Source: Hydrolagus colliei (lineage: Eukaryota). Taken from it: a stretch of DNA of 64,000 bases. Made by a program: the position numbers and the translations under genes. Where the stretch lies: assembly GCA_035084275.1 (NCBI GenBank), contig CM068763.1:7874001-7938000 (forward strand). Reading direction: 5' to 3'. Under the pieces are notes generated by a model. That model ran no database searches and had not been told where the DNA came from. It saw only the letters and a program-made list of their open reading frames with translations. Below are positions 4,314 to 63,716 of the stretch, piece after piece; the first letter of the stretch is position 1, and each line of letters opens with the position of its first letter.

Positions 4314-5336
4314 CTACACGGTAGATTCCCTCGGCCCTTCCTTGGCCTTTTTACAGCCATACAGCCATTTGATGACCCGTGCGTTGCGTTCGATGACGGA
4401 CACCTCAGCGGGGACCTGTCTGTTCATTTCCTCTTCGAAAATTCCCTCCCTGTCCGCGCTGTGCGCGCCCGGCTCGCTGCTGTGTGAGGTGGCCGTGCCG
4501 CTGGGCTGGGGTCTGGCCGAGGCCAGGTGCCGAACAACCTCCGGGTCCAGCCCACAGTCGTTGAAGAAACGTTCAGCCTCTGAGAGAGCCACGGACGAGC
4601 GCTGGTCAGGGTCAGAGTTCACACTCCGCACAGCGGCCTCGCTCACCCTCGCCGACCTTTGAAGCCGGGCGCGACAGGCGGCCGGAGAGGTGGCGCCGTT
4701 TGCGTGCGGGTACAGGAACACGTAATCGTTCTTGGCGTCCGGCGCTGAGTTACCGGAGGCATTGACGTGCCGGGCTCTCCCGCCGTCCCTCACGCGGTCC
4801 AGGGAGGCCGTCTGTTTCTCTCTCACCGACCCCCGGAACAGCCGGCGGATGAAGCCGTAGCTTCGGCCGCTCTCCGGGGCTCGGCCTTTGCCGTCCCACT
4901 TCTGCCGGTACATGATCAGGGAGTCGGGCCTCGGCATTCTCCTGGCGTTGGCCCGCCGGGCGGTGGGCAGGTCCTGGGAAGCCCCGTCCAGCAGAACATT
5001 CTGCACGTTCTTCAGCAGCTCGAGGTTGGTGTTCTCCTTGGTGGTGTGGCCTGCGCCGGGCTGGAGGCGGCTGAGATCGGCCGCGCTTGGCTGACCCTGG
5101 TATCCGCGGGAGTGACCGGGCGGCGCCGACGTGGCTCGGGACGGAGAGGCCGGATCCTGCCGGCTGCTCACGGCCGGCTGGCTCTTGACGTACTTGGCCT
5201 TGTCGGCTTCCAGCCGTTCGACGGCGCTACGCACGGGGCTCCTGTCCTCGCTTTGCATTTGCCGCCGTAGATACTCCGGGCCTCTGTTGAGCAGCCGCAG
5301 AGGGGACGGCGAGCTCACCGGGGTCCCAGGCTTCAT
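4314..5336 (-). CDS. FAM110D: Protein FAM110D (single coding exon, 340 aa)
   Basis: FAM110 N-terminal motifs PLRLLNRGPEYLRRQ and SAVERLEADKAKYVKS; C-terminal ERFFNDCGLD and SVIERNARVIKWLYGC..RESTV; GC/CpG-rich coding composition; lies downstream of PDIK1L in the same orientation, as in human. Confidence 0.9.
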   Translation of the reverse strand: MKPGTPVSSPSPLRLLNRGPEYLRRQMQSEDRSPVRSAVERLEADKAKYVKSQPAVSSRQDPASPSRATSAPPGHSRGYQGQPSAADLSRLQPGAGHTTKENTNLELLKNVQNVLLDGASQDLPTARRANARRMPRPDSLIMYRQKWDGKGRAPESGRSYGFIRRLFRGSVREKQTASLDRVRDGGRARHVNASGNSAPDAKNDYVFLYPHANGATSPAACRARLQRSARVSEAAVRSVNSDPDQRSSVALSEAERFFNDCGLDPEVVRHLASARPQPSGTATSHSSEPGAHSADREGIFEEEMNRQVPAEVSVIERNARVIKWLYGCKKAKEGPRESTV

Positions 5337-7078: not shown

Positions 7079-7734
7079 TGTTGGGAGCTGGGCCTGTATC
7101 CCTCCCTGTACCGCACACCGCTAATCACAGCTGCACAACACACTGACTGAGAGCTAGCTTTGATCTTAACACACCGTTGAGGCTTTCATGTTAGCTGCAG
7201 GCAGTAGAAATATTACACGTTTGCCTTTTATTCAGTGGATGAAAGGGCTGGAGTTTGCAGAGAAGGAGACCAGTATTAAGTTTTAGACCTCTATTCTCAA
7301 GTAAAATGGGAAACATGCGCAAATCCTTTGTAAACTCTTTGTGTGTGTGTGTGTGCGTGTGTATAAAAAGGGTGACAGAATTGTGTGTGTGCATTGTCGC
7401 TAGTTATTGCTGAAGAAGGCCAGTGTGTTGTTGGGTGGGAGAGGGGGGGGTGGGGGTGGTGTTGGGGGCAGTGGAAATCCGCCAAGTACAGTCTAATCTG
7501 CATGAGTCAATGGCAATGGGAGGAATGGGGTCAAGATGGTTTGGGGCTGAGCTCAATGATGAACCTGGGGCTCACTGTTCACAGCTGGCCAGAGACGGGT
7601 GTACGATGAGAGCGAAATGTATCCACCCAGTCTTAGTCTGCAGGACTAGTTCAATTTATAATTTTAGGTTTTGCTGAATTGTCAAAAATTAATACAGTGT
7701 TTTACAATAACAACAAAATGCATATGTATTCCGC

Positions 7735-8656
7735 CTTTCATGTCCGACATCGAATCGTGGACGAGGGACAACTTTTTGCAATTGAACGTGAATAAGACCG
7801 AGGCCCTCCTGATTGGCTCAAGCCAGCGCCTCCGCACATCGGGCGCTGCCAGCCTCAACATCCAAGGCTGCACTCTCCACCTCACAAAGCCAATCAGGAA
7901 CCTCGGCATCATGTTCGATCAAAAACTTTCCTTCCTCCTCCACATCCGCGCCTTGACCGGCACCGCCTATTTCCATCTGCGCAACATTGCCAGGCTCCGC
8001 AACTATCTTACCCCCCGCGCTGCCGAAACACTCGTGCATGCATACATTACCTCATGGCTGGATTACGGAAATTCTCTCCTAGTCGGCCTCCCCAGTTCCT
8101 CCATTCATAGGCTGCAGGCCATCCAAAACTCTGCAGCCCGTGTACTATCCTGCACCCGCCTCCGTGACCACATAACCCCCACCCTCTCCCGTCTCCACTG
8201 GCTCCCCATCCTCCAGAGGATCGAATTTAAGATCCTCGTCCTCACCTATAAGGCCTTACACGGCCTTGCCCCATCCTACCTAGCCAATCTCTCCCCCTAC
8301 ATGCCCACCCGGACCCTCCGTTCAACAGGACTTGGCCTGCTCCAAGCCCCCCGCCCGAACCGCCCCACCATCGGAGGCCGGGCCTTCAGTTTCTCCGCTC
8401 CCACCTTATGGAATGCCATCCCTCAATCCCTCCTTTTCGCCTCATCCCTTTCCTCTTTCAAGGCCGATTTGAAGACTTTCCTCTTCGATCGTGCCTTTTG
8501 TTCCACCCCGAACTCTTTTACCTCCCCTTCGTGTTTCACCCCTTCCCAAACACTCCCCTCCCAGCTCGGGTCACACGCCTCTTGTTTAGCGCCTTGGGAC
8601 GTCCTCCCGACGTGAAAGGCGCTATATAAATGTAAATTGTTGTTGTTGTTGTTGTT
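7735..8656 (+). mobile_element. L2-clade LINE, 5'-truncated; ORF2 C-terminal part still open
   Basis: ORF 7671-8615 (SDIESWTRDNFLQLNVNKTEALLIG...HITPTLSRLHWLP..RIEFKIL) typical of L2 ORF2; ends in a 3' hairpin and (TTG)n tail; same family as 39660-41270. Confidence 0.92.
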
Positions 8657-10650: not shown

Positions 10651-10721
10651 CTTGGCTGGCTCCTGCTTCCTGCTCACCCCTCGTCCCCTCCGCTCCACCA
10701 TCGGCCTCCGCGCTTTCAGAC

Positions 10722-11299
10722 NNNNNNNNNNNNNNNNNNNNNNNNNNNNNNNNNNNNNNNNNNNNNNNNNNNNNNNNNNNNNNNNNNNNNNNNNNNNNNN
10801 NNNNNNNNNNNNNNNNNNNNNNNNNNNNNNNNNNNNNNNNNNNNNNNNNNNNNNNNNNNNNNNNNNNNNNNNNNNNNNNNNNNNNNNNNNNNNNNNNNNN
10901 NNNNNNNNNNNNNNNNNNNNNNNNNNNNNNNNNNNNNNNNNNNNNNNNNNNNNNNNNNNNNNNNNNNNNNNNNNNNNNNNNNNNNNNNNNNNNNNNNNNN
11001 NNNNNNNNNNNNNNNNNNNNNNNNNNNNNNNNNNNNNNNNNNNNNNNNNNNNNNNNNNNNNNNNNNNNNNNNNNNNNNNNNNNNNNNNNNNNNNNNNNNN
11101 NNNNNNNNNNNNNNNNNNNNNNNNNNNNNNNNNNNNNNNNNNNNNNNNNNNNNNNNNNNNNNNNNNNNNNNNNNNNNNNNNNNNNNNNNNNNNNNNNNNN
11201 NNNNNNNNNNNNNNNNNNNNNNNNNNNNNNNNNNNNNNNNNNNNNNNNNNNNNNNNNNNNNNNNNNNNNNNNNNNNNNNNNNNNNNNNNNNNNNNNNNN
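10722..11299. other. Assembly gap (578 N)
   Basis: Run of N; both flanks are L2 3'-region sequence. Confidence 1.
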
Positions 11300-13028
11300 G
11301 CTCTCTCCTTCCCCTCTTTTAGATCACATCTGAAGACCCTCCTCTTCGACCACACTGATGGTCACCTCCTCCCTCCCCGCGGCTCGGCACCCTGACGCTT
11401 CCCAGAGTTAAGTGCTCTGTGTGAAGGGCACTGTATAAATGCAAGTTGTTGTTGTTGTTGAATCCTCCACTTCCCCACCACCCACCCCACTTTCACATGT
11501 GCCTGCGGCTTCACTCAAACCTGCCATTCTGGGAGGAAAAGGACAAAATCTTGCATTTTCCAGCAGCTCCGTGGAATGTGTGAAAGCGTTTCACACATTC
11601 TGTGAAGTGCCAGTACAGAGAGCGCAGGTTTGCGTCAGCAACAATTCAACCCACAAGTCAACAAGTCAATGACAGATTGGAGGAGGAGAGAGGGAACTGG
11701 AAATAAATATTCAGTTTGTTGGGTCTCAAATTTCAAAAAAGAAAAAAAAAACGTGGAAGGAAACCAGCCACGGGAGGGAGAGACGAGGGGGAGACTTCAC
11801 AGTGAAGCCATTCAGCGTGATAAAGTTCACGCTGCATTGCATTATCCTCCTCGCCTGGAGGTGCTAACTCGCGCTGCAGGACGCCCCGCACGTCTCGGTT
11901 GAGGCGTTACTGCCGGCTGAGCTCAGCCAGTTCAGGTGGACGTGAAAGATGTGGTGTTGTTACGATGGGTGCGGAGTGACGGGTTACAGACCTCGCTGCA
12001 CTAATGGATCGGGATAAAATTTATACCAAACAGTTACAATTGCTCTCCGCCTTGCCAGCACCGAGATAGACATTCCTGTGGAATCAGCAGAGTGGCTTAG
12101 ATTGGTCACAAGCTGCCCGTTTGCTCCCCAGCTCATCTGATATCCCATCACTCTGGAGCTTAATAGCTGGGGAAAGGCTTTACCAAAGCCAGCGCCCGAG
12201 ATGGCTTTTCCATATGTCCCCAAACTGCCTCTCGGCCTCCCTGCCTCTGCCACAGTTCCTGGGACAGACACACCAGCTGTCCTATTGAGAGCATTAAATC
12301 TCTGGGAGAGGAGAATTCGGAGACAAGGAAGTTGTATAACACACTCAGTGATATTTTGATTTGTTCCGAGCTGGGAGTGGAGGAGGAAACTGCTGCTTTA
12401 GTGCACCTACTCACAGAGAGAGAGAGAGTTTAACAGCTTAAATAGTGCAGAAGTGTGAAATTCCACCTTGTCTCACCCCGTGGGATCATTTTGTCTTACA
12501 ATTTAAAGATTGTGCAGAATTGTGGCAAAATTTCTCAGTTTAATCTTAATCTTGACACCGGTTCTTTTTCTGTGAAGGCTTTTGAAACGTCTTAATGATG
12601 TGATAAGGCGCTATATCAAATGCAAAGATGATTAATATTATTATCAATAACAAGAATTGAACAAAAGCAGCTTTAAAATTTAGATTTTTTCCCCAGATTC
12701 TGTATCATCTTAAATTTTAAGGCATTAACTGGCTGACTTTCCCTCTCACCGCTTAAGAGTTACCTAGGACAGTAATTCGCCAATGTAGTTTAGTAAGGAT
12801 GTAGCTGTAAACAAACCGAGATCAAGTAACTCAGGGTAGAAGCTGGAAAAGTGACTTGAGTCAGAGGCTGGAAGAAAGTGTAAAGTAGCTATGAGATGCT
12901 GACACTCAGGTCATTCAGTCAGGGCCACAGACATCTGGCTTTTGTTAAATGGTCAGCAAAGTGAATGATAAGAAATGGAGAGGCTGGAACCGGGCCTCCA
13001 CTGAGCTGTTTGTGGAATTTGATTCCAC

Positions 13029-27552: not shown

Positions 27553-28302
<750 letters not shown>

Positions 28303-29121
28303 TCAAAAAACAAGAGGTTAGTTGCACTTAATTATTAACAGTTATTAATAATTAACAAGTTAATTATTGTTTTTTATAACCTCTATAAATAACAATAATG
28401 TTTCCTCTATCCTGGCCCAAATATACACACATCTCAATTCTGTAACATCAACAATAAAATTGCACATATATAGCACCTTTCACGTCAGGAGGACATCCCA
28501 AAGCGCTGAACAGTCTGGTCAGGACCCAAGCAGGGGTGGGGGGGGGGGGGGGGGGCGGGGGTTGGTGGTAACATTATTATTATTAGTAGTAGTAACATCT
28601 AATACAATCATTTTACTATTTGTTTCAAAGCTTGAAGATAGTAGTAGAACAAGGGGATTCAATGTTACTGATTGTTAATTATATTACAGTATTATGTTTC
28701 TCCATAGACAAGGGCTTCAGCTGACTGGTATAATGTGTGCTGCATCATGGGAGTACATTAGTTAATGTATATTTATAAACACTGTAATATAAATAATATA
28801 TGTATGTATGTATGCGTGAGTACATTTGGTAGACATTTTAGGAAAACAAAATACTTTAACTAGGACAGTATCTGTTAAGTCGAAAGATATTTGACAGATA
28901 CATAATTTCAAATATTGTATTGCCAATCACTTCTACAGTTTGAAGATGTCAGTGTTTTTCTACAGTTAAAGTTTATTAAAGTTTAACTTATTAAACTTGA
29001 ATGAATAATACTCAGCTAACACGTTATCCCTTTACCTGAGGCTCTGGATTAAAATTCAGTACAAAGCATACAATAACTATCGGAATTCACTATCGAAAAG
29101 CAAAGTTAAATGATTATTTTA

Positions 29122-29502
<381 letters not shown>

Positions 29503-38388: not shown

Positions 38389-39072
38389 TAAAAAAATACA
38401 ATTTTCGTAAGGTATTTTCCTACAGCACGCAGAGAGAGGCACAAAAACAAGTCAGATTATGACATTGCAAATAATCAACCACACAACCGCAGGAAACCAG
38501 CAATCAAACACACTGGAGTAGGGGATAATTTGTAACATTTGATAATTATTAGCAACAATAATGTCTGCCTTATGATATTCTACTTAACATTAATATTCTA
38601 CTCAGATGTTCACAGTTAAATGACCACAAGGTGGTGGTGCCCCTCCCATTGAGGTTTCGTTCTGAATGGAGAGAATTATTACTGTACTCGGGTAATTGGC
38701 AGTCAAGTTTACTTTGATGCTTTCAGTTTTATTTCTGGTTGAAAATCTTCTGAACCAGGTGAAGCCCATTCTGTTTCCAAGGCCTTGATTTCCATCCTTG
38801 TGGTCCTTGTGTCATGGTAAATCTAGGTCAGCCACCCAGCCACCACTACCACAACAACAACAACTCACGTGTCGCCATTCATTAGGAGGGACACAACGAC
38901 TCTGTCTGGCGTCTCTCTGCTGTTTGCTGCACAATAATCATCCTCGCTTTTCATATAAATATCAAAAATGTTGCACAAGCATTTCACAGGGAATTGCTGT
39001 CAAATGTAGTGGACTGTGTACTTCTAGGCACATACAACTGTCACTTGGCACACAGTAATTCCCCACGAACAT

Positions 39073-39659: not shown

Positions 39660-41270
39660 GGTGACAACAAATTAACAACAACAAATTACACTTATAAAGC
39701 GCCTTTCACGTCGGGAGGACGTCCCAAGGCGCTGCACAGGAGGCGTGTGACCTGAGCTGGGAGGGGAGTGTACGGGAAGGGGTGAAACACGAAGGGGAGG
39801 TCGAAAAATTCGGGGTGGAACAAAAGGCACGGTCGAAGAGGAAAGTCTTCAAACCGGCCTTGAAAGAGGAAAGGGAAGAAACGAGACGGAGGGATTGGGG
39901 GATGGAATTCCATAGGGTCGGAGCGGAGAAACTGAAGGCCCGGCTTCCGATGGTGGGGCGGTTCGGGCGGGGGGCTTGGAGCAGGCCAAGTCCTGCTGAA
40001 TGGAGGGTCCGGGTGGGCTTGTAGGGGGAGAGTAAATTGGTTAAATAGGGCGGGGCAAGGCCATGTAAGGCCTTGAAGGTGAGGACGAGGATCTTGAACT
40101 CGATCCTCTGGAGGATAGGGAGCCAGTGGAGACGGGCGAGGGTGGGGGTTATGTGATCGCGAAGGCGGGTGCGGGATAATACACGGGCTGCAGAGTTTTG
40201 AATGACCTGCAGCCTGTGAATGGAGGAACTGGGGAGGCCGACGAGGAGAGAGTTTCCGTAGTCCAGCCTTGAGGTGATGTATGCGTGCACGAGTGTTTCG
40301 GCAGCGTGGGGGATAAGATAATTGCAGACCCTGGCAATGTTGCGCAGGTGGAAGTAAGCGGTGCCAGTCAAGGCACGGATGTGGGGGAGGAAGGAGAGTT
40401 TTTGGTCGAACGTGATGCCGAGGTTCCTGACTGGCTTTGTGAGGAGGAGAGTGCAGCCTTGGATGTTGAGGCTGGCAGCGCCCGATGTGCGGAAGCGCTG
40501 GCTTGAGCCGATCAGGAGGGCCTCGGTCTTACTCACGTTCAATTGGAGGAAGTTGTCCCTCGTCCAGGACTCAATGTCAGACAGACATGCTGTCAGAACA
40601 TCGATGGTCTGGGGGTTGAGGGATGAGGCAGAAAGGTACAGCTGGGTGTCGTCCGCATACATGTGGAAATTTACCCCGTGTTTGCGGATGACATCGCCCA
40701 GAGGGAGCGTATAAATGGTGAAAAGGAGGGGGCCGAGGACAGAGCCCTGAGGGACACCGTGAGAAACTGTGCGGGGGTTTGAGAAGAAACCGTTGGAAGA
40801 TACAAAGTGTAGGCGGTGGGTCAGGTAGGAATGGAACCAGTCAAGGACTGTGCCTTGAAGGTTGAGGTGGGAGGAAAGACGTTGGAGGAGGATGGTGTGA
40901 TCGACTGTGTCGAACGCAGCAGACAGGTCAAGGAGGACGAGGAGGCAGAGGGAGCCGTGGTCACAGGCAGTTAGGATGTCATTTGTAACCTTAACCAGGG
41001 CAGTTTCTGTGCTGTGAGCAGGGCGGAAACCTGATTGGAGGGGTTCAAGGAGTGAGTGAGTTGAAAGGAAAGAGCGGAGCTGGGAGGCAACCACTCTTTC
41101 AAGGACCTTGGATAAAAACGGGAGGTTGGAGATGGGTCGATAGCTTGATGGTTGCGACGCAACAAGGGAGGGTTTCTTCAGGATAGGGGTGATGGTGGCT
41201 GTTTTAAGGGAGGTAGGGACAGTGCCTGAGGAGAGGGAAAAGAAAGGTTAATGGTGTCAGAAATGAAGTG
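39660..41270 (-). mobile_element. Young L2-clade LINE, 5'-truncated, with intact RT frame (open from about 41245 to 39706)
   Basis: YRPISNLPFLSKVLE, LDLSAAFDTVDH, GVPQGSVLGP, YADDTQLY, HITPTLARLHWLP; 3' hairpin and (TTG)n tail; endonuclease domain absent. Confidence 0.95.
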
Positions 41271-41306: not shown

Positions 41307-41638
41307 TCACAATCCTATATTCCCGTCATCTAAATGCTTCTCAGGCACAGGCGGAGGCTCCTCCTCCTCCCCTCTCTGAGCCGCGGCCTGAGGTTCTATC
41401 TGAGCCCCTTTATTTTTCTGCTTCACCACTTTTGCATAAATCGCCATGTTTTCCTGTGGCTTGTTTACTTCCACTGATTCCCCGCTGCCCGGCCTCCCAT
41501 CAGCTGCAGCTGTAAAGCTTTGCGCTGAGCTGGCCTGGCCCGGGCTGGGACCAGGCTGCAGTTCCGGCTCCCACTTGTTCACGTTGACTTCGCTGACGAC
41601 TTCATATAGATCATCCTCAGCTTCCAGCGTCTTGTCCC
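41307..41638 (-). CDS. PAG1/LIME1-like transmembrane adaptor, coding exon 4 (GDKTLEAEDDLYEVV...IYAKV...EEEEPPPVPEKHLDDGNIGL*)
   Basis: Acceptor ttctgttcacacag|GG, phase 1; extends ORF 41307-41582; YEVV and YAKV tyrosine motifs and an acidic PPPVP motif similar to PAG1. Confidence 0.8.
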
Positions 41639-41650
41639 CTGTGTGAACAG

Positions 41651-42050
41651 AAACAACAACAACAACAAAATTACATTTATAGAGCGCCTTTCATGTCGGG
41701 AGGTATGTGCCAAAGTGCTGAACGGTCAAGTTGGGACCCGAGCAAGAGGGAGGGGCAGGATAGGGGGGGAGGGGAGGGAGAGATGGAGGGAATTAGGAAG
41801 AAGTTGGGAGGGCACAATCGAAGAGGAGAGTCTTGAGACTGGCCTTGAAGGAGGCAAGGGAGGGAGTGAAGCAAAGCGACTGTGGGATGGAGTTCCAGAG
41901 TGTGGGGCCAAAAACGCTGGAAGACCGTCCACCGATGGTAGTGTGGGTCAGGCGGGGGATATGGAGCAGACCAGAGCCCGCTGAATGGAGGGGGCGGGCA
42001 GTTTCATGGGGACAGCAGGTCAGAGAGGTAGGAGGGGGCAAGGCCATAAA
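41651..42050 (-). mobile_element. L2 3' fragment filling most of intron 3 of the adaptor gene
   Basis: GLAPSYL..PTLWNSIPQSL-type sequence, hairpin, and a (TTG)n tail ending about 12 nt before the acceptor. Confidence 0.88.
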
Positions 42051-42087
42051 AACAAGGGACATTAAAATATCATCCCATGTACATTAC

Positions 42088-42151
42088 CGTGTAAACGTGG
42101 AAGCTCTCCATTGGGACTTGTGTCTGTGATCGGAGTGGGAAGGCTCTTCTT
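42088..42151 (-). CDS. PAG1/LIME1-like adaptor, coding exon 3 (KKSLPTPITDTSPNGELPRLH)
   Basis: Acceptor ttcttcattccttcatttag|AAG, donor ACG|gtaatg; 64 nt, phase 0 in and phase 1 out, matching both neighbours. Confidence 0.7.
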
Positions 42152-42603
42152 CTAAATGAAGGAATGAAGAATATGTCAGTTTCTCTGTGTTTTAACTGCT
42201 AGTAATCAGTTCACGAGTCACAGGATTAATGGTCTGGTTACAGGCTATGCATCTCCCTGCAACAAACTCAGGTAAAATCCTTACTTGTTTCTGAATATTT
42301 TGTTAACCATTAAGTGAGAGGTATTGGGTCGCTGGGTTAAACCTGCATCAAGTTTGTTTAGCTCATTGGATTTGAGTTACTGGGGTCCCGAAGATTGGTT
42401 TTTTCCAATCTGCGCCAAATACTCTGGAATAAGATAGGAAAGGTCCCTCTAGGGGAAGACTGCGTGCTGAGACAAATTTAAACCAGATATTCCTCTCTGT
42501 GGAACTCTCAGTAATTTGTTTTGGAGACTCTTATGCACGGTGCTAGACCAAAAAAAAATCAAATAACTGAACGATTTAATTTAGCCAACAGTGAGTCACT
42601 CAC

Positions 42604-42652
42604 CACAGACACAAGCTCAGGTCTCCCTCTTCTTCCTTGTTTTCCTATAAGT
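42604..42652 (-). CDS. PAG1/LIME1-like adaptor, coding exon 2 (R-LIGKQGRRGRPELVSV)
   Basis: Acceptor ctctgctcatcag|A, donor GTG|gtgagt; 49 nt, phase 2 in and phase 0 out; basic juxtamembrane stretch. Confidence 0.7.
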
Positions 42653-42679
42653 CTGATGAGCAGAGACAGTACTCGTCAA

Positions 42680-43310
42680 TGTTAGCAATTACATCCTCTC
42701 TGAGATCAGTGCTCCCTCTGCCTCCTTTTATACCTGGACCTGCCTGTTGCATTCAACACACTTGACCATCCTCCTCCACCGCCTCTCCTCATTTATCCAC
42801 CTCAGTAGGACCAAACTTACCTGGTTTGAGTCCTACCTAACTAACCATCTAACTAACTTTGTTCCCAAAAACATTCTTTCCTCCCACCCTGCCTGGTCAC
42901 CTGTGGTTCCGGCTCCACTGGCTTTCCATATAAAATGGATCAACTTCAAGATCCTCACACTCATCTACAAACCCCTTCAAAGGCACGGCACCTCTCTAAC
43001 CTAATTACTCCCCACTCCACCGCCTGCTGCCTCTTCTCGGCTGGCTTCGGCCTCCTGCTTGTCCTCTCCCCTCCACCATCAGCGGCCACACTTTCAGCCA
43101 CTACAACCTGAAGCTTTGAAGTCTTCCCTCAATCCCACCACCTTGCCTGCTCCTTCCCCTTTTTCAGATCATGCCTGAAATCTTTCCTCTTCGACCGCTC
43201 TTACAGTTACCTCTTCCCTCCCTCCTGGCTCAGTGTCAGGCTCCGCCACTGTTAAGCCTATTGTGAAGCACTCCAAGAGGCCGCCCTGTGTAAACGCAAG
43301 TTGTTGTAAC
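42680..43310 (+). mobile_element. Degraded L2 fragment
   Basis: TILLHRLSS..LTWFESYL, INFKILTLIYK and an L2 tail. Confidence 0.75.
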
Positions 43311-43535
43311 AAAGTATTAAGTCAATAAGGTAGTTAGAGGGCTGGCGTTTCAGCCGAGGCAAAGTTACGGTGAAACCAGTTCCAAAAAAGTCTGAACAAG
43401 GTGGGAAAATTCCAATTATGGATCTAATTTGCTAAATGTACTCAGTTTAATGAGCAACTTATTGACAGCTAAACCTCCCTCCAGACCAGGATTAGACACC
43501 AGGGCTTTGCACTGAAATCCCAGGATTTACATTAC

Positions 43536-43663
43536 CTCTTGCAGAAAGAGCAGCCAACTGTGAGCAGAATGAGAAGCAGCAAGATGGAGATGGCGAGCCA
43601 GAGCTGAGGGAGGTGTAACACATCAGGTATGTTCTCCACCCAACTCTCAGCAACAGGAGCCAT
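43536..43663 (-). CDS. PAG1/LIME1-like adaptor, coding exon 1 (MAPVAESWVENIPDVLHLPQLWLAISILLLLILLTVGCSFCK)
   Basis: Acceptor ttgttttccag|G (exon starts at 43699), ATG at 43663, short ectodomain, one hydrophobic helix, CxxC (CSFC) followed by KR; donor AG|gtaatg, phase 2. Confidence 0.82.
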
Positions 43664-43741
43664 GAGGCCAGGCTTGGGAGTGACCAAACAGGTGGAAACC
43701 TGGAAAACAAGATATAGAGTTGGTCTGACGAATAAATCTTT

Positions 43742-51463: not shown

Positions 51464-52522
51464 TCACTTCTCCTTGCGGCTGAGTTTGCGTTTGATTCTG
51501 TTCCGCATATAAATGGCCGTGGTGATGCTGGAGGTGATGATGAAGGTGCAGCCGATGAGCATGGCACAAGTGGTGTGGTGATGCCACGCCTGGTACAGGT
51601 GCCGGCGCCGTGTGTAGTCCAGGTGCACGGCCTCCAGTTGGGCGAGCGTGCAGAAAACCATGAATAGGTGAAAGATCTGATGTCCCTGCAGGAAGATGTC
51701 GCACTTTCCCGGCAGCCACTTCTCCGGGTGTGGGCAGGAGAAGAAGTGAGCGCACACCAGGAAGCAGAGGACCTGGCAACGGTGGTAAGGCACGGCCGGG
51801 TCGGTGCAGCTGCTCGAGTGGCAGCTGTAGATGCGGTGGAGCACGGGGCTGATGTCCAGCAGGTAGGCCAGCCCGGCGGGCACCACCTGGTATAGCTTAC
51901 GTGCCCACGGCTTCAGCACCTGAGCGTTGGACTTGGCGTAGCAGCAGCCGATACAGGACATCCAAGCCAGGAGCGTGGCCACCGGGAGGAAGAAAGAGCT
52001 GACGAAATGGTACCACTCCTCCTGAATGCTGTAGTAATAATGGACCAGGGCGCTGCTGTACTGATAGATAGCGACACCCACATAATCCAGGAAGAAGAAG
52101 GAGTAGTGCGCGAGCTCGGAGCGGGCTTGCAGCAGGTGAGCTAAGGCACTGCAGCTCAGGTAGTTGAAGGAGGCCAGGATCAGGATCAGGAAGGGCCAGG
52201 CGTGGCGATCCGAGAGGAAATCCACCGTCTTGGCGAACTCCTGCAGTTTGATCAGGACCACCAGGGCGGCAATCAGGTGCGACCACACGTTGACCGCCTC
52301 GTTATGCCGCTGGAACAGAGTCAGGAAATAATAGCGCCAGCTGTGGTGAACCGGCCGGTACCCGGAGTGGATGTAAGGCTCCCGGAATATGCGCGGCACC
52401 TCGTGGTCCCGCACCGTGGCCGGCAGGCAGGGGACGCTCTGCTCCAGGAGGCTCGGCAACTGCCGGATCTGCTGGATGTTGATGAAGAGGCGGCTAATCT
52501 GCTCCATCACCACAGTGGCCAT
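51464..52522 (-). CDS. PAQR7: Membrane progestin receptor alpha (PAQR7), single coding exon, 352 aa
   Basis: N-terminus MATVVMEQISRLFIN like fish mPR-alpha; PAQR motifs HNEAVNVWSH, SALAH..FFLDY, PEKWLPGKCD, GHQIFH; multiple hydrophobic helices; acceptor ccccctag| just upstream (exon starts at 52540). Confidence 0.93.
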   Translation of the reverse strand: MATVVMEQISRLFINIQQIRQLPSLLEQSVPCLPATVRDHEVPRIFREPYIHSGYRPVHHSWRYYFLTLFQRHNEAVNVWSHLIAALVVLIKLQEFAKTVDFLSDRHAWPFLILILASFNYLSCSALAHLLQARSELAHYSFFFLDYVGVAIYQYSSALVHYYYSIQEEWYHFVSSFFLPVATLLAWMSCIGCCYAKSNAQVLKPWARKLYQVVPAGLAYLLDISPVLHRIYSCHSSSCTDPAVPYHRCQVLCFLVCAHFFSCPHPEKWLPGKCDIFLQGHQIFHLFMVFCTLAQLEAVHLDYTRRRHLYQAWHHHTTCAMLIGCTFIITSSITTAIYMRNRIKRKLSRKEK

Positions 52523-55599: not shown

Positions 55600-56215
55600 C
55601 CCCCCCACCCTGCCACCCCACCCACCCCTCCCCGCCGCACCCCACCCCGGGCAACAAGTAACGAGTTGGCGGTACCTACCGCCCGCACAGCAACCGCACA
55701 GCAAGCAAGTTTCATTCACTTGAAAGGAAACCACGAGTTTTCAGGCTGGGTGGGAATCACAGCCAGTCCGCCCGCTGCAATAAATAAGAACGGATCAGCC
55801 TTGATGTACTCCGGGATCTGTGTGTGTGTGTGTGTGTGCGCGCGCGTTTCCCAAATATAAGGGTGATGGCGGCTGGACAGGCTCCCGTGCCGGTTGGTTA
55901 GCGGTGGTTAGGCTGCACTTTCTTCTATTTTCCGTGAGTAATAAACATGAGGCTCTGTGCTTAGGGTGGAGCCCTCTCCCTCTCTCACACACACACTGAC
56001 TGATATACAAGCCGAGCCCTGTCAGCTCCGCGCGGTTACATTGTATCTCACAGCGGATACATTGCATTCTAAACCGCCGCCTGTCAATCACAGCGCGTGG
56101 CGTTCCCCCCTCCGCCAATTAGCGTGCCGCTCCACAGAACCACGTGGGACTAACTGTATCCAAATGACAGGAGGGGGCGGGGCCTGGGCGGGGCCTGGCC
56201 GGTGCCAAGCGCGGT
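55600..56215 (-). promoter_or_regulatory. PAQR7: Probable PAQR7 promoter and non-coding first exon (donor GCG|gtaggt at 55679)
   Basis: CpG-enriched; tandem GGGCGGGG boxes at about 56173-56195; CCAAT at about 56115; minus-strand donor. Confidence 0.5.
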
Positions 56216-56262
56216 GTGTGTGTGAGAGACTGCTGTGTGTGTGTATGTGTGTGAGAGACTGA

Positions 56263-56293
<31 letters not shown>

Positions 56294-56462
56294 CTGATGT
56301 GTGTGTGTGTGAGAGAGACTGATGTGTGTGTGAGAGACTGATGTGTGTGTGTGTGTGAGAGACTGATGTGTGTGTGTGTGAGAGAGACTGATGTGTGTGT
56401 GTGTGTGTGAGAGACTGATGTGTGTGTGTGTGTGTGAGAGACTGATGTGTGTCTGTGTGTGT
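56214..56462. repeat. Compound microsatellite [(TG)n(AG)nACTGA]
   Basis: About 9-10 units with variable TG number. Confidence 0.95.
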
Positions 56463-56844
56463 TGGGGGTGGCAGCCGGTGACCGGTACCGCGGTGGTGGG
56501 GGGGCGGGGTGGGGGTGGTAGCTTGTCAATGCTGCCAGTCCCCTCTCTGTACGTGGGGGAGCCATTCACTTCCCAGTCAATGAATCGCACTGACAAGCAC
56601 TTACAGTTGTTTGCACTCAGACCGCCAATAACATTCACAGTGAAACAAACACTGATCAGGATCTGGGCGTTGGGAGACAGCAAAATTGGTTGTTATAGCT
56701 AACGGCAACAGAGTAGGAGGCTTTGGTTCACCTTTACCCAGTAAATTTCAGTCCACAAGTCAGTGAATATAGTCATCGGAAAGTACCATAGTAAAATTCT
56801 GAATAAGATCAGGCAGTTCCATGTAGATGCGGAAGATTGTTAAT

Positions 56845-62531: not shown

Positions 62532-63716
62532 ATAGATTCATAGATTCATGGAATTTTACGGCACAAAAGGAGGCCATTCGGCCCATCTAGTCTGTGCCGG
62601 CTCTTTGAAAAGAGCGATTCAATCCCACTGCCCTGCCCGCTCCCCATAGCCTAATAGACCTGTTCTCCCTAAATAAAGATCTAATTCCCTTTTAAAAGTT
62701 GTTATCGAATCAGCCTCCACCACCTTTTCAGGCAATGCATTCCAGATTCGAACAACTCGCTGAGTGAAAAAATTTCTCCTCAGCTCCCCTCTACTTGGCC
62801 TTGAAACTATTTTAAATCTGTGACCACGAGTCACAGATTCGCCCACGAGTGGAAATAGTTTTTCTCTATTTGCCCTGTCGAAACCCCTCATGATCTTATA
62901 AACCTCTATTAGGTCTCCTCTCAATCTTCTCTGCTCCAGAGAGAATAACCCTAGCCTATCTAGCCTCTCCTCATAGCTGAAGTCCCTCAATCCTGGCACC
63001 ATCCTGGTAAATCTTCTTTGTACCCTTTCCAATGTCTTCACATCCTTTCTGTAGTGTGGTGACCAGAATTGAACACAGTATTCCAGCTGAGGCCTCACCA
63101 AACTTTTATAGATGTTAGTCAGCACTTCCTGACTTTTGTACTCTATACCCCTATTTATAAAGCCTAGTATCCCATATGCCTTCTTAACAGCCTTGTCTAC
63201 CTGTCCTGCCACCTTCAACGAGTCACTAACACAAATCCCCAGGTCTCTCTGTTCCTTCACACCATTTAAAATTGTACTATCTAGCCTATATTGCCTCCCT
63301 TCATTTCTTCTCCCAAAATGCATCACCTCACACTTCTTTGCATTAAACTTCATCTGCCATGTGTCTGCCCACTTTACCAATTTGTCTATATCCTCTTGCA
63401 GATGGCTACTATCCTCCTCACTATTTACTATTCTCCCTAACTTAGTGTCATCTGCAAACTTGGAAACTGTACTCCGTACACCCAAGTCCAGATCATTGAT
63501 GTAGATTACAAACAGCAATGGTCCCAAAACTGATCCCTGTGGCACACCACTGCTCACTTCCCTCCAGTCTGAAAAACAGCCGCTCACTACAACTCTGTTT
63601 TCTGTCTCGCAGCCAGTTGTGGATTCACGCTGCCACTGTCCCTTTTACGCCATGGGCCTTTAATTTCCTAATAAGTCTCTCATGTGGCACTTTATCAAAT
63701 GCCTTTTGAAAGTCCA
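62532..63716 (-). mobile_element. CR1-clade LINE 3' part with open RT/C-terminal ORF (62619-63587)
   Basis: SGVPQGSVLGPLLFVIYINDLD, KFADDTKLG, LVRPQLEYCVQFWSP, RRLRGDLIEVYKI, FFTQRVVRIWNALP; 3' end with an ATGAATCT-type tandem repeat. Confidence 0.93.

What the first reader, a model, noticed from the sequence alone, without database searches (positions are those of the whole stretch)
41307..43699. Hidden four-exon gene for a PAG1/LIME1-like palmitoylated transmembrane adaptor between PAQR7 and PDIK1L
Seen: four minus-strand exons (43663-43536, 42652-42604, 42151-42088, 41638-41307) with canonical AG/GT ends and compatible phases (2,0,1) join into one 573-nt frame of 190 aa: MAPVAESWVENIPDVLHLPQ-LWLAISILLLLILLTVG-CSFC-KRLIGKQGRRGR...GELPRLHG...EDDLYEVV...IYAKVVKQK...EEEEPPPVPEKHLDDGNIGL. 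The ORF track shows only part of the last exon. Known: a short ectodomain, one TM helix, juxtamembrane CxxC and cytoplasmic YxxV motifs define raft-targeted adaptors (PAG1/Cbp, LIME1, LAT). As I recall, PAG1 has the same motif order (RELPRIP, LYETV, EYASV, EEEAPPPVPVKLLDE). Inference: human PAG1 (8q21) and LIME1 (20q13) lie in regions paralogous to the 1p36 PDIK1L/FAM110D/STMN1 block, and I know of no human family member at 1p36. This may therefore be a further ohnolog lost in mammals, shortened so that it lacks PAG1's C-terminal Csk-binding region.
Basis: partly seen in the sequence, partly recalled or inferred. Interest (0 to 1): 0.85.

Follow-up and report, generated by a model that had tools for sequence, protein, structure and literature searches.

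The report
PAG-like membrane adaptor gene, cartilaginous fish
This is a real, intact small gene for a membrane-anchored signalling adaptor that resembles the middle of PAG1/Cbp; sharks and rays carry the same gene under the label "uncharacterized protein", so it is a modest new family member, not a major surprise.

Summary
Four minus-strand exons with AG/GT ends join in frame to 190 codons.

- **Exons 1 and 4 are confirmed.** A profile of 15 elasmobranch proteins hit only these two of the window's 3820 six-frame fragments (E 9.1e-8 and 1.8e-19).
- **Exons 2 and 3 are inferred.** They rest on splice and phase logic. They form the best of 2 frame-keeping paths. Similarity to orthologue linkers is nil for exon 2 and marginal for exon 3.
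- **Orthologues exist.** They are annotated as "uncharacterized protein" in 15 named shark and ray species. The gene is hidden only in that this genome, probably a chimaera's, has no proteins in the collection searched.
- **The PAG likeness is supported.** Pfam PAG matches exon 4 alone at 26.2 bits (cut-off 27) and 15 of 15 orthologues at E<=0.01, always on profile positions about 174-275 of 428. The LIME1 model does not match.
- **Conserved features** are one TM helix, a juxtamembrane Cys, LYEVV, IYAKV and PPPxPxK.

The third-ohnolog and lost-in-mammals ideas stay untested. The scan had not noted this family on other DNA.

The parts
43536..43663 (-). Exon 1: start codon, 20-residue acidic ectodomain, TM helix, CSFC
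   Evidence: Sequence and translation. The family profile hits this frame at E 9.1e-8, with profile position 1 on the Met. 4 of 4 family-invariant columns are kept: P, L, S, C.
43541..43597 (-). Hydrophobic stretch (residues 23-41 of the exon 1 piece) that includes the two juxtamembrane cysteines (C38, C41; 43541-43552)
   Evidence: Best 19-residue Kyte-Doolittle window has mean 2.69. The N-flank has 0 K/R and 3 D/E; the C-flank has 5 K/R and 1 D/E. This predicts N-terminus outside and tail inside. Only the first Cys is invariant in the family.
42604..42652 (-). Exon 2 (inferred): basic juxtamembrane stretch
   Evidence: The splice sites ag| and |gtgagt; the donor ranks 2nd of 111 GT sites. 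It is part of the best frame-keeping path. There is no profile hit and 136 of 500 shuffles reach its score, so it rests on splice and phase logic alone.
42088..42151 (-). Exon 3 (inferred): linker with a ..TSPNGELP.. stretch
   Evidence: The acceptor ranks 3rd of 154 AG sites, but the donor gtaatg ranks only 17th of 111. It is part of the best path. It shows marginal likeness to orthologue linkers (19 of 500 shuffles). No Pfam hit and no profile hit.
41307..41638 (-). Exon 4: cytoplasmic tail and stop codon
   Evidence: Family profile E 1.8e-19. Pfam PAG E 5.4e-6. phmmer hits to Narcine and Heterodontus proteins at 42% and 39% identity. 14 of 15 invariant columns are kept.
41595..41615 (-). 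DDLYEVV motif (first invariant tyrosine)
   Evidence: D, L, Y and E are invariant in 15 of 15 orthologues and kept here. It is of the YEEI/V kind that a review calls the typical Src SH2 site in Cbp (passage). Binding is inferred.
41427..41441 (-). IYAKV motif (second invariant tyrosine), followed by VKQKNK
   Evidence: I, Y, A, K and the next K are invariant in 15 of 15 and kept here. Y-small-x-V resembles Cbp's Csk site YSSV (passage). Binding is inferred.
41337..41357 (-). PPPVPEK: PxxPxK motif after an acidic run
   Evidence: PPP, P and K are invariant in 15 of 15 and kept here. Reading it as a class II SH3 ligand is recalled general knowledge and was not tested.
41639..42087 (-). Intron 3, holding a 3' fragment of an L2-type element
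   Evidence: The ORF 41793-42062 resembles the C-terminus of the L2 reverse-transcriptase ORF at 39706-41094. Depth in run X1 reaches about 595,000 there, against about 52 over the exons.

Best explanation
The locus is an intact, single-copy, four-exon gene. It is this genome's orthologue (probably a chimaera's) of a protein family present across sharks and rays and so far labelled only 'uncharacterized protein'.

The product is a small transmembrane adaptor of about 190 aa. It has a 20-residue acidic N-terminus outside the cell, one TM helix, juxtamembrane cysteines (CSFC) that are probably palmitoylated, a basic stop-transfer stretch and a disordered cytoplasmic tail.

The tail carries three motifs that are invariant in the family, in the same order as the middle third of PAG1/Cbp. 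I take the family to share ancestry with that region, as a short paralogue within the PAG/LIME group.

Inferred mechanism:
- A Src-family kinase docks by its SH3 domain on PPPVPEK and phosphorylates the two tyrosines.
- pYEVV then holds Src-family SH2 domains.
- pYAKV recruits a Csk-type or other SH2 protein.
- The protein would thus act as a minimal membrane scaffold that tunes Src-family kinase signalling.

Shown: the gene, its conservation, the motifs and the Pfam PAG match. Inferred: palmitoylation, phosphorylation, binding partners and expression in this species.
For: **Gene reality**
- The family profile hits only the E1 and E4 frames among 3820 window fragments (E 9.1e-8 and 1.8e-19).
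- 18 of the 19 invariant family columns that align to E1 or E4 are kept.
- The exons lie at single-copy depth while the introns hold high-copy repeats.

**Family**
- 14 proteins turned up, plus Narcine and two skates. That makes 15 named elasmobranch species.
- 11 further members of the skate cluster lie on contigs of 1.1-2.3 kb. Nine of them hold the full 230-aa ORF and two hold 150 aa. They look like spliced transcripts.

**PAG likeness**
- Pfam PAG is the only family hit for E4 (E 5.4e-6).
- It matches 15 of 15 orthologues at E<=0.01, always on profile positions about 174-275. The Heterodontus protein scores 29.1 bits, above the 27-bit cut-off.
- The language-model look-alikes of E4 and of the Heterodontus protein are PAG, LIME1, SCIMP, GAPT and LAX clusters, all transmembrane adaptors.
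- The Atlas model of the Heterodontus protein has mean pLDDT 0.46, which fits a disordered tail.

**Topology.** The charge bias across the TM helix predicts the tail inside.

**Cbp features for comparison.** One TM helix, two palmitoyl sites just after it, YEEI/V Src SH2 motifs and a YSSV Csk site (review passage).
Against: - **No expression data.** No RNA run holds this locus, so neither expression nor the three junctions are shown in this species.
- **E2 and E3 lack homology support**. The E3 donor is weak by my rough score, ranking 17th of 111.
- **The Pfam score of the window's piece is just under the cut-off** (26.2 against 27). 12 of 14 orthologues carry no precomputed Pfam domain.
- **The N-terminal TM and Cys part gives no PAG hit**.
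- **No PAG1 or LIME1 protein came up in sequence searches.** The single-sequence search over 1.84 billion representatives and the profile search of 5153 candidates at E<=1 both missed them. The likeness could therefore be convergent short motifs.
- **The second Cys of CxxC is not conserved** in the family.
- **Polymorphism gives no sign of constraint.** Run X1 shows 3 differences in E4, of which 2 change the protein (L26P, E93V) and 1 is silent. The numbers are tiny.
Confidence: 0.7

Rival explanations
1. It is a real adaptor gene, but unrelated to PAG1/LIME1. The likeness would be convergence of short linear motifs (YxxV, PxxPxK, an acidic run) on a disordered tail, as happens among transmembrane adaptors.
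For: - Sequence searches found no PAG1 or LIME1 protein.
- The Pfam scores hover around the cut-off.
- The TM and Cys region gives no PAG hit.
- Language-model neighbours also include the unrelated adaptors SCIMP, GAPT and LAX at similar scores.
Against: - The PAG model matches about 100 residues, with three anchors in the same order, in 16 of 16 sequences (the window's exon 4 and the 15 orthologues). The E-value goes down to 6.9e-7.
- No other adaptor model matches comparably. LST1 matches 1 of 15 at E 0.0079, and LAT gives E 0.07 over the TM helix only.
- The gene sits in a block whose human counterpart (1p36.11, with STMN1) is, by my recollection, paralogous to the blocks holding PAG1 with STMN2 and LIME1 with STMN3. 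Those two co-locations were seen in passages.
Confidence: 0.15
2. It is simply the species' PAG1 or LIME1 orthologue, diverged and shortened.
For: - PAG is the only Pfam family hit.
- I could not show that cartilaginous fishes have separate PAG1 and LIME1 genes.
Against: - The family covers only profile positions about 174-275 of 428 and ends there, in all 15 species.
- The LIME1 model does not match.
- The neighbours are of the FAM110, kinase and PAQR families, in an order that fits the 1p36.11 block. They do not fit the STMN2/PAG1 (8q21) or STMN3/LIME1/TPD52L2/ZBTB46 (20q13.33) neighbourhoods seen in passages.
Confidence: 0.05
3. In this genome the locus is a decaying or unexpressed relic, or the true transcript uses other middle exons than the reader's.
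For: - There is no RNA evidence.
- E2 and E3 have no homology support.
- The linker is about 35 residues shorter than in sharks, and the shark IPSIPLTS and LEYMTP stretches are missing.
- 2 of 3 differences in E4 in run X1 change the protein.
- No AATAAA lies on the gene's strand between the stop codon and 38733.
Against: - The frame is open through all four exons.
- 18 of 19 alignable invariant columns are kept, across the old split from elasmobranchs suggested by 39-42% identity. That needs long purifying selection.
- At site score >=0, no path other than a 3-nt acceptor shift keeps the frame.
Confidence: 0.1

Closest known systems
PAG1 / Cbp (Pfam PF15347)
   Same: - Short ectodomain, one N-terminal TM helix and cysteines just after it.
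- A disordered tail with a YE-V-type tyrosine motif, a Y-small-x-V motif and a proline-rich stretch.
- The Pfam PAG model matches the tail on profile positions 177-268. Cbp's features were taken from a review passage.
   Different: - It is less than half the length, about 190 aa against a 428-position profile.
- Nothing matches profile positions 1-173 or 276-428, so the region with Cbp's own Csk site is absent.
- It has only two conserved tyrosines, against nine in Cbp.
- Its genomic neighbourhood is different.
- The window's piece scores 0.8 bit under Pfam's cut-off.
LIME1 (Pfam PF15332)
   Same: - It is the same kind of protein, a palmitoylated transmembrane adaptor.
- LIME1 clusters appear among the language-model neighbours at 0.79-0.92.
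- Several Atlas clusters carry both PAG and LIME1 Pfam labels, so the two families overlap.
   Different: - The LIME1 model gives no hit to the window's pieces at E<=10.
- It gives no hit to any of the 15 orthologues at E<=0.01.
Elasmobranch 'uncharacterized protein LOC...' family (for example Scyliorhinus canicula LOC119966687, Leucoraja erinacea LOC129709847)
   Same: - Same architecture and same invariant motifs.
- Profile E 1.8e-19 (E4) and 9.1e-8 (E1).
- This is the family that the window's gene belongs to.
   Different: - The window's protein is shorter, 190 aa against 215-264.
- It is only 39-42% identical over exon 4.
- It lacks the IPSIPLTS and LEYMTP stretches.
- It keeps both cysteines of CxxC.
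SCIMP and other small transmembrane adaptors (LST1, GAPT, LAX1, LAT)
   Same: - Small, single-pass proteins with a tyrosine-motif tail and, in some, a proline-rich tail.
- They are language-model neighbours at 0.85-0.93.
- The proposed mode of action is alike: SH3 docking plus SH2 recruitment, including Csk. The biology of SCIMP is recalled.
   Different: - No SCIMP, GAPT or LAX Pfam hit.
- LST1 matches 1 of 15 at E 0.0079, and LAT gives E 0.07 over the TM helix only.

Membership tests
PAG/Cbp family (Pfam PF15347) | Match to the family profile at or above Pfam's gathering score (27 bits) | tested here: inconclusive
Window exon 4 alone scores 26.2 bits, E 5.4e-6. Orthologues score 29.1 bits (Heterodontus), 24.3 (P0008, Chiloscyllium punctatum) and 23.4 (Narcine). 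15 of 15 match at E<=0.01.
PAG/Cbp family (Pfam PF15347) | Short ectodomain, N-terminal TM helix and two juxtamembrane palmitoylated cysteines | tested here: met
   The sequence shows a 20-residue N-terminus, a hydrophobic stretch with mean hydropathy 2.69 and CSFC at its end, with a positive-inside charge bias. Acylation itself is not testable here. The PAG profile does not align to this part.
PAG/Cbp family (Pfam PF15347) | C-terminal region with the Csk SH2 site (YSSV in Cbp) | tested here: not met
   The profile match stops at position 268-275 of 428 and the proteins end within about 5-10 residues of it. A different Y-A-K-V motif exists further upstream.
PAG/Cbp family (Pfam PF15347) | Several YEEI/V-type Src SH2 motifs (four in Cbp) | tested here: inconclusive
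   There is one such motif (LYEVV), invariant in the family. The Cbp count comes from a review passage.
PAG/Cbp family (Pfam PF15347) | Orthologous position beside STMN2 (human 8q21) | tested here: not met
   The neighbours are of the FAM110, kinase and PAQR families. The STMN2/PAG1 co-location comes from a passage.
LIME1 (Pfam PF15332) | Match to the family profile | tested here: not met
   No hit at E<=10 for the window's pieces. No hit at E<=0.01 in 15 orthologues.
Elasmobranch uncharacterized-protein family (alignment A1) | Significant match to the family profile with the invariant motifs kept | tested here: met
   E 1.8e-19 (E4) and 9.1e-8 (E1) among 3820 fragments. 18 of 19 alignable invariant columns are kept. 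The 6 invariant linker columns could not be aligned.
Elasmobranch uncharacterized-protein family (alignment A1) | Same position (synteny) and same exon structure in other species | not testable with these tools
2R ohnolog of PAG1 and LIME1 | A tree placing it as a sister lineage, with separate PAG1 and LIME1 genes in the same genomes, in a paralogous block | not testable with these tools
   No PAG1 or LIME1 sequence could be obtained. Only the human co-locations STMN3/LIME1 and STMN2/PAG1 were seen in passages. The 1p36-8q-20 paralogy is recalled.

The most novel reading that the evidence does not exclude
This family would be a third surviving 2R ohnolog of PAG1 and LIME1, the STMN1-block copy. 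It would be kept in cartilaginous fishes (chimaeras, sharks, rays) and lost, or changed beyond recognition, in bony vertebrates. Reduced to a minimal module of SH3 site, pYEVV and pYAKV, it could recruit Csk through a different tyrosine than PAG1 uses.
Probability: 0.35. Interest if true: 0.55.

Novelty: new member of a known kind. Interest (0 to 1): 0.45.

Why it matters
Transmembrane adaptors such as PAG1/Cbp and LIME1 set the threshold of Src-family kinase signalling in lymphocytes and other cells. Their early evolution is poorly charted because their disordered tails diverge quickly.

A short PAG-like paralogue shared by chimaeras, sharks and rays would add a member to this group at the base of the jawed vertebrates. 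It would give 15 or more "uncharacterized" database entries a testable function. It would also offer a natural minimal version, with two tyrosines and one SH3 site, for asking which parts of PAG1 suffice to scaffold Src-family kinases and Csk.

If instead a bony-vertebrate counterpart exists, the interest drops to ordinary gene annotation.

Tried and rejected
**Searches that gave nothing**
- The search for homologous proteins with exon 4 alone found nothing. Its length band was 60-190 aa and no candidate shared three words.
- A profile search with the 15-member alignment found the same 14 elasmobranch proteins and nothing else at E<=1 among 5153 candidates.
- A search of solved structures with the family profile gave only a TM-composition hit (TMIE, E 0.0097) and ribosomal S17 noise.
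- Only one run, DNA by its colinear contigs, holds the locus, and no RNA run does.
- The window's PAQR and FAM110 proteins are not in the protein collection, so neither the organism nor the exact gene names could be read from it.

**Hits rejected**
- The best hit of the representative search (P0001, 5462 aa, E 2e-15) is a false positive. Ten identical tandem repeats each give 5.8 bits, with none of the motifs aligned.
- P0004 (484 aa, 4 stretches) is likewise a repeat protein.
- The zebrafish-named Atlas cluster si:ch73-204p21.2 (score 0.94, no Pfam) remains an untested lead. Its only paper lists it as a differentially expressed gene in neurons (passages).

**Literature**
- I found no paper on this family. 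The four searches were:
  - 2 papers, neither relevant by listing.
  - 26 papers hold at least 2 of the 3 terms and 20 were listed; none is relevant by title.
  - unhelpful.
  - 1 paper, on trypanosomes.
- The library lacks most subscription journals.
- Supplements are closed. Supplemental Fig. S3C and Data S2 of PMC6886504 on C1orf232 may bear on the lost-in-mammals claim, and I did not see them.

**Steps not taken**
- I did not look for STMN1 in the window. 387 fragments would have needed several scans, and I dropped it as a side issue.
- The 16-aa exon 2 piece is below the 20-residue limit of the Pfam scan and was not sent.
Full report
**1. The observation**

- 43663-43536: ATG ... AAGAG|gtaatg
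- 42652-42604: ag|A CTT ... GTG|gtgagt
- 42151-42088: ag|AAG ... CAC G|gtaatg
- 41638-41307: ag|GG GAC ... TGA

The pieces translate as quoted. The lengths 128, 49, 64 and 332 nt give phases 2, 0 and 1. A frame check in a script gave an open path of 190 codons. The mechanical ORF list shows only a 91-aa ORF inside exon 4 and a 51-aa ORF over exon 1.

**2. Is it a gene?**

A phmmer search of exon 4 alone against 1.84 billion representative proteins gave four hits at E<=0.001.
- Two are true relatives with the same build. One is a 215-aa protein of Narcine bancroftii (E 1.4e-5, 42% identity). The other is a 246-aa protein of Heterodontus francisci (E 5.4e-5, 39% identity). Both are named 'uncharacterized protein' by NCBI.
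- The other two are repeat proteins. The top one owes its E-value to ten identical repeats of 5.8 bits each.

Searching with the Heterodontus protein found 14 proteins, all from sharks and rays and all uncharacterized. One cluster also holds the two skates Leucoraja erinacea and Amblyraja radiata. It has 11 further members on contigs of 1.1-2.3 kb. Nine of these hold the full 230-aa ORF and two hold 150 aa. For a gene with introns, they look like assembled transcripts. In all, 15 named species have it: 11 sharks and 4 batoids.

I aligned 15 of these proteins (A1) and ran their profile against all 3820 six-frame fragments of the window.
- Only two fragments hit: the exon 4 frame (E 1.8e-19, profile positions 120-227) and the exon 1 frame (E 9.1e-8, positions 1-44, Met on Met). 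The next best E was 2.3.
- Of the 25 columns invariant in the 15 proteins, 4 of 4 that fall in exon 1 are kept.
- 14 of the 15 that fall in exon 4 are also kept; the exception is D to E.
- The 6 invariant columns in the linker could not be aligned.
- Contigs of DNA run X1 cover the exons at depth 49-59. Parts of introns 1 and 3 reach thousands to about 595,000. So the exons are unique sequence between repeats.

**3. The weak part of the model**

Exons 2 and 3 have no profile hit.
- In a shuffle test against the linkers of 14 orthologues, exon 2 is no better than chance (136 of 500). Exon 3 is marginal (19 of 500). By eye it shares a ..T-x-x-N-G-x-[IL]-P.. stretch.
- Middle exons are still needed, because exon 1 joined directly to exon 4 would shift the frame.
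The other is a 3-nt acceptor shift. At a laxer threshold there are 13 paths.
- The scores use a rough recalled matrix, by which the exon 3 donor ranks only 17th.
- No RNA run holds the locus, so the junctions are unconfirmed.

**4. What kind of protein is it?**

- **Exon 1** gives a 20-residue acidic N-terminus and a hydrophobic stretch (mean hydropathy 2.69) that ends in CSFC. There are no basic residues before it and five after it, so the tail should be cytoplasmic.
- **Exon 4** carries three family-invariant motifs, DDLYEVV, IYAKVVKQK and EEPPPVPEKHLDD.
- **The Atlas model** of the Heterodontus protein is of low confidence (pLDDT 0.46), as expected for a disordered tail.

**5. Relation to PAG1 and LIME1**

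Pfam PAG is the only family that matches exon 4: E 5.4e-6, 26.2 bits against a cut-off of 27, residues 6-104 on profile positions 177-268 of 428.
- All 15 orthologues match PAG at E<=0.01, on the same profile stretch. The best is 29.1 bits.
- LIME1 does not match.
- The language-model neighbours are PAG and LIME1 clusters for exon 4 (0.87, 0.86, 0.79). For the Heterodontus protein they are PAG, SCIMP, LIME1, GAPT and LAX clusters. All are transmembrane adaptors.
- According to a review passage (PMC3492796), Cbp/PAG1 has one N-terminal TM helix and two palmitoyl sites just after it. It has nine tyrosines, four of them in YEEI/V Src SH2 motifs, and one Csk site, YSSV.
- This family keeps the anchor and one motif of each kind. 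It ends where the PAG profile reaches about position 270, so PAG1's own Csk region has no counterpart.
- I could not obtain any PAG1 or LIME1 sequence.

**6. Neighbourhood and the ohnolog idea**

- The window's other genes are of the FAM110 (4314-5336), protein kinase (27553-29472) and HlyIII/PAQR (51464-52522) families, all on the minus strand. I confirmed families only.
- The order fits a cattle gene list: CNKSR1, FAM110D, ZNF593, C1orf232, PDIK1L, TRIM63, SLC30A2, EXTL1, PAFAH2... STMN1, PAQR7 (passage, PMC12075139).
- Passages place LIME1 with STMN3, TPD52L2 and ZBTB46 on 20q13.33 (PMC7839675). They place PAG1 with STMN2 on 8q21 (PMC8606210).
- From memory, not from a call, the STMN1, STMN2 and STMN3 blocks are 2R paralogues, as are PDIK1L/STK35 and FAM110D/B/A. 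That would make a third PAG/LIME copy beside the STMN1 block plausible.
- It remains untested. I saw no orthologue outside cartilaginous fishes, but my searches were few and limited in reach.
- C1orf232, a gene added by PhyloCSF and expressed in brain and eye (passage, PMC6886504), lies next to PDIK1L in mammals and could not be compared.

**7. Organism and 'hidden'**

That note is unchecked.
- The tight gene spacing and the 39-42% identity to elasmobranch orthologues fit that.
- The window's own PAQR and FAM110 proteins are absent from the protein collection, so the genome has no proteins in that collection.
- No holocephalan member of the family appeared in any search. The family may therefore be unannotated in chimaeras generally, which is a modest annotation gain.

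**8. Polymorphism**

Run X1 differs from the window at 7 single bases in 2601. Three lie in exon 4: L26P, Q73 silent and E93V in the numbering of the exon 4 piece. None touches the invariant motifs. The numbers are too small to say anything about constraint.

**9. Verdict**

- The locus is a real, intact gene.
- It is a new (chimaera) member of an elasmobranch-wide, uncharacterized family.
- The family is best read as a short PAG-like transmembrane adaptor.
- The third-ohnolog, lost-in-mammals reading is possible but unshown.
- Its interest is moderate.

Noticed in passing
window 39706-41094 (-): There is an intact 462-aa ORF for an L2-type reverse-transcriptase C-terminal part. It lies about 200 nt downstream of the adaptor's stop codon on the same strand. 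Further copies or fragments lie at 7671-8615 (+) and in intron 3 (41793-42062).
   Followed up: no
window 41306-38733 (-): No AATAAA lies on the gene's strand between the stop codon and 38728-38733. The only nearby one is inside the coding sequence at 41409-41414. The 3' end of the transcript is therefore unknown and may run into the L2 element or use a variant signal.
   Followed up: partly
window 41359, 41418, 41560: DNA run X1 differs from the window at three places in exon 4, two of which change the protein (E93V, L26P) and one of which is silent. Four single-base differences lie in the 1784 intronic bases.
   Followed up: partly
window 62619-63587 (-): A second, different reverse-transcriptase ORF of 322 aa, probably another LINE family. 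It was not scanned.
   Followed up: no
window about 10700-11300: A run of N shows as X in three ORFs.
   Followed up: no
window 56119-56683 (-): Two overlapping ORFs rich in His-Thr and Ser-Leu repeats arise from a simple repeat. They are probably non-coding.
   Followed up: no
mammalian 1p36.11 block (literature): C1orf232 is a small gene added by PhyloCSF and expressed in brain and eye. It lies between ZNF593 and PDIK1L in the cattle list. Its relation to the family described here is unknown.
   Followed up: partly
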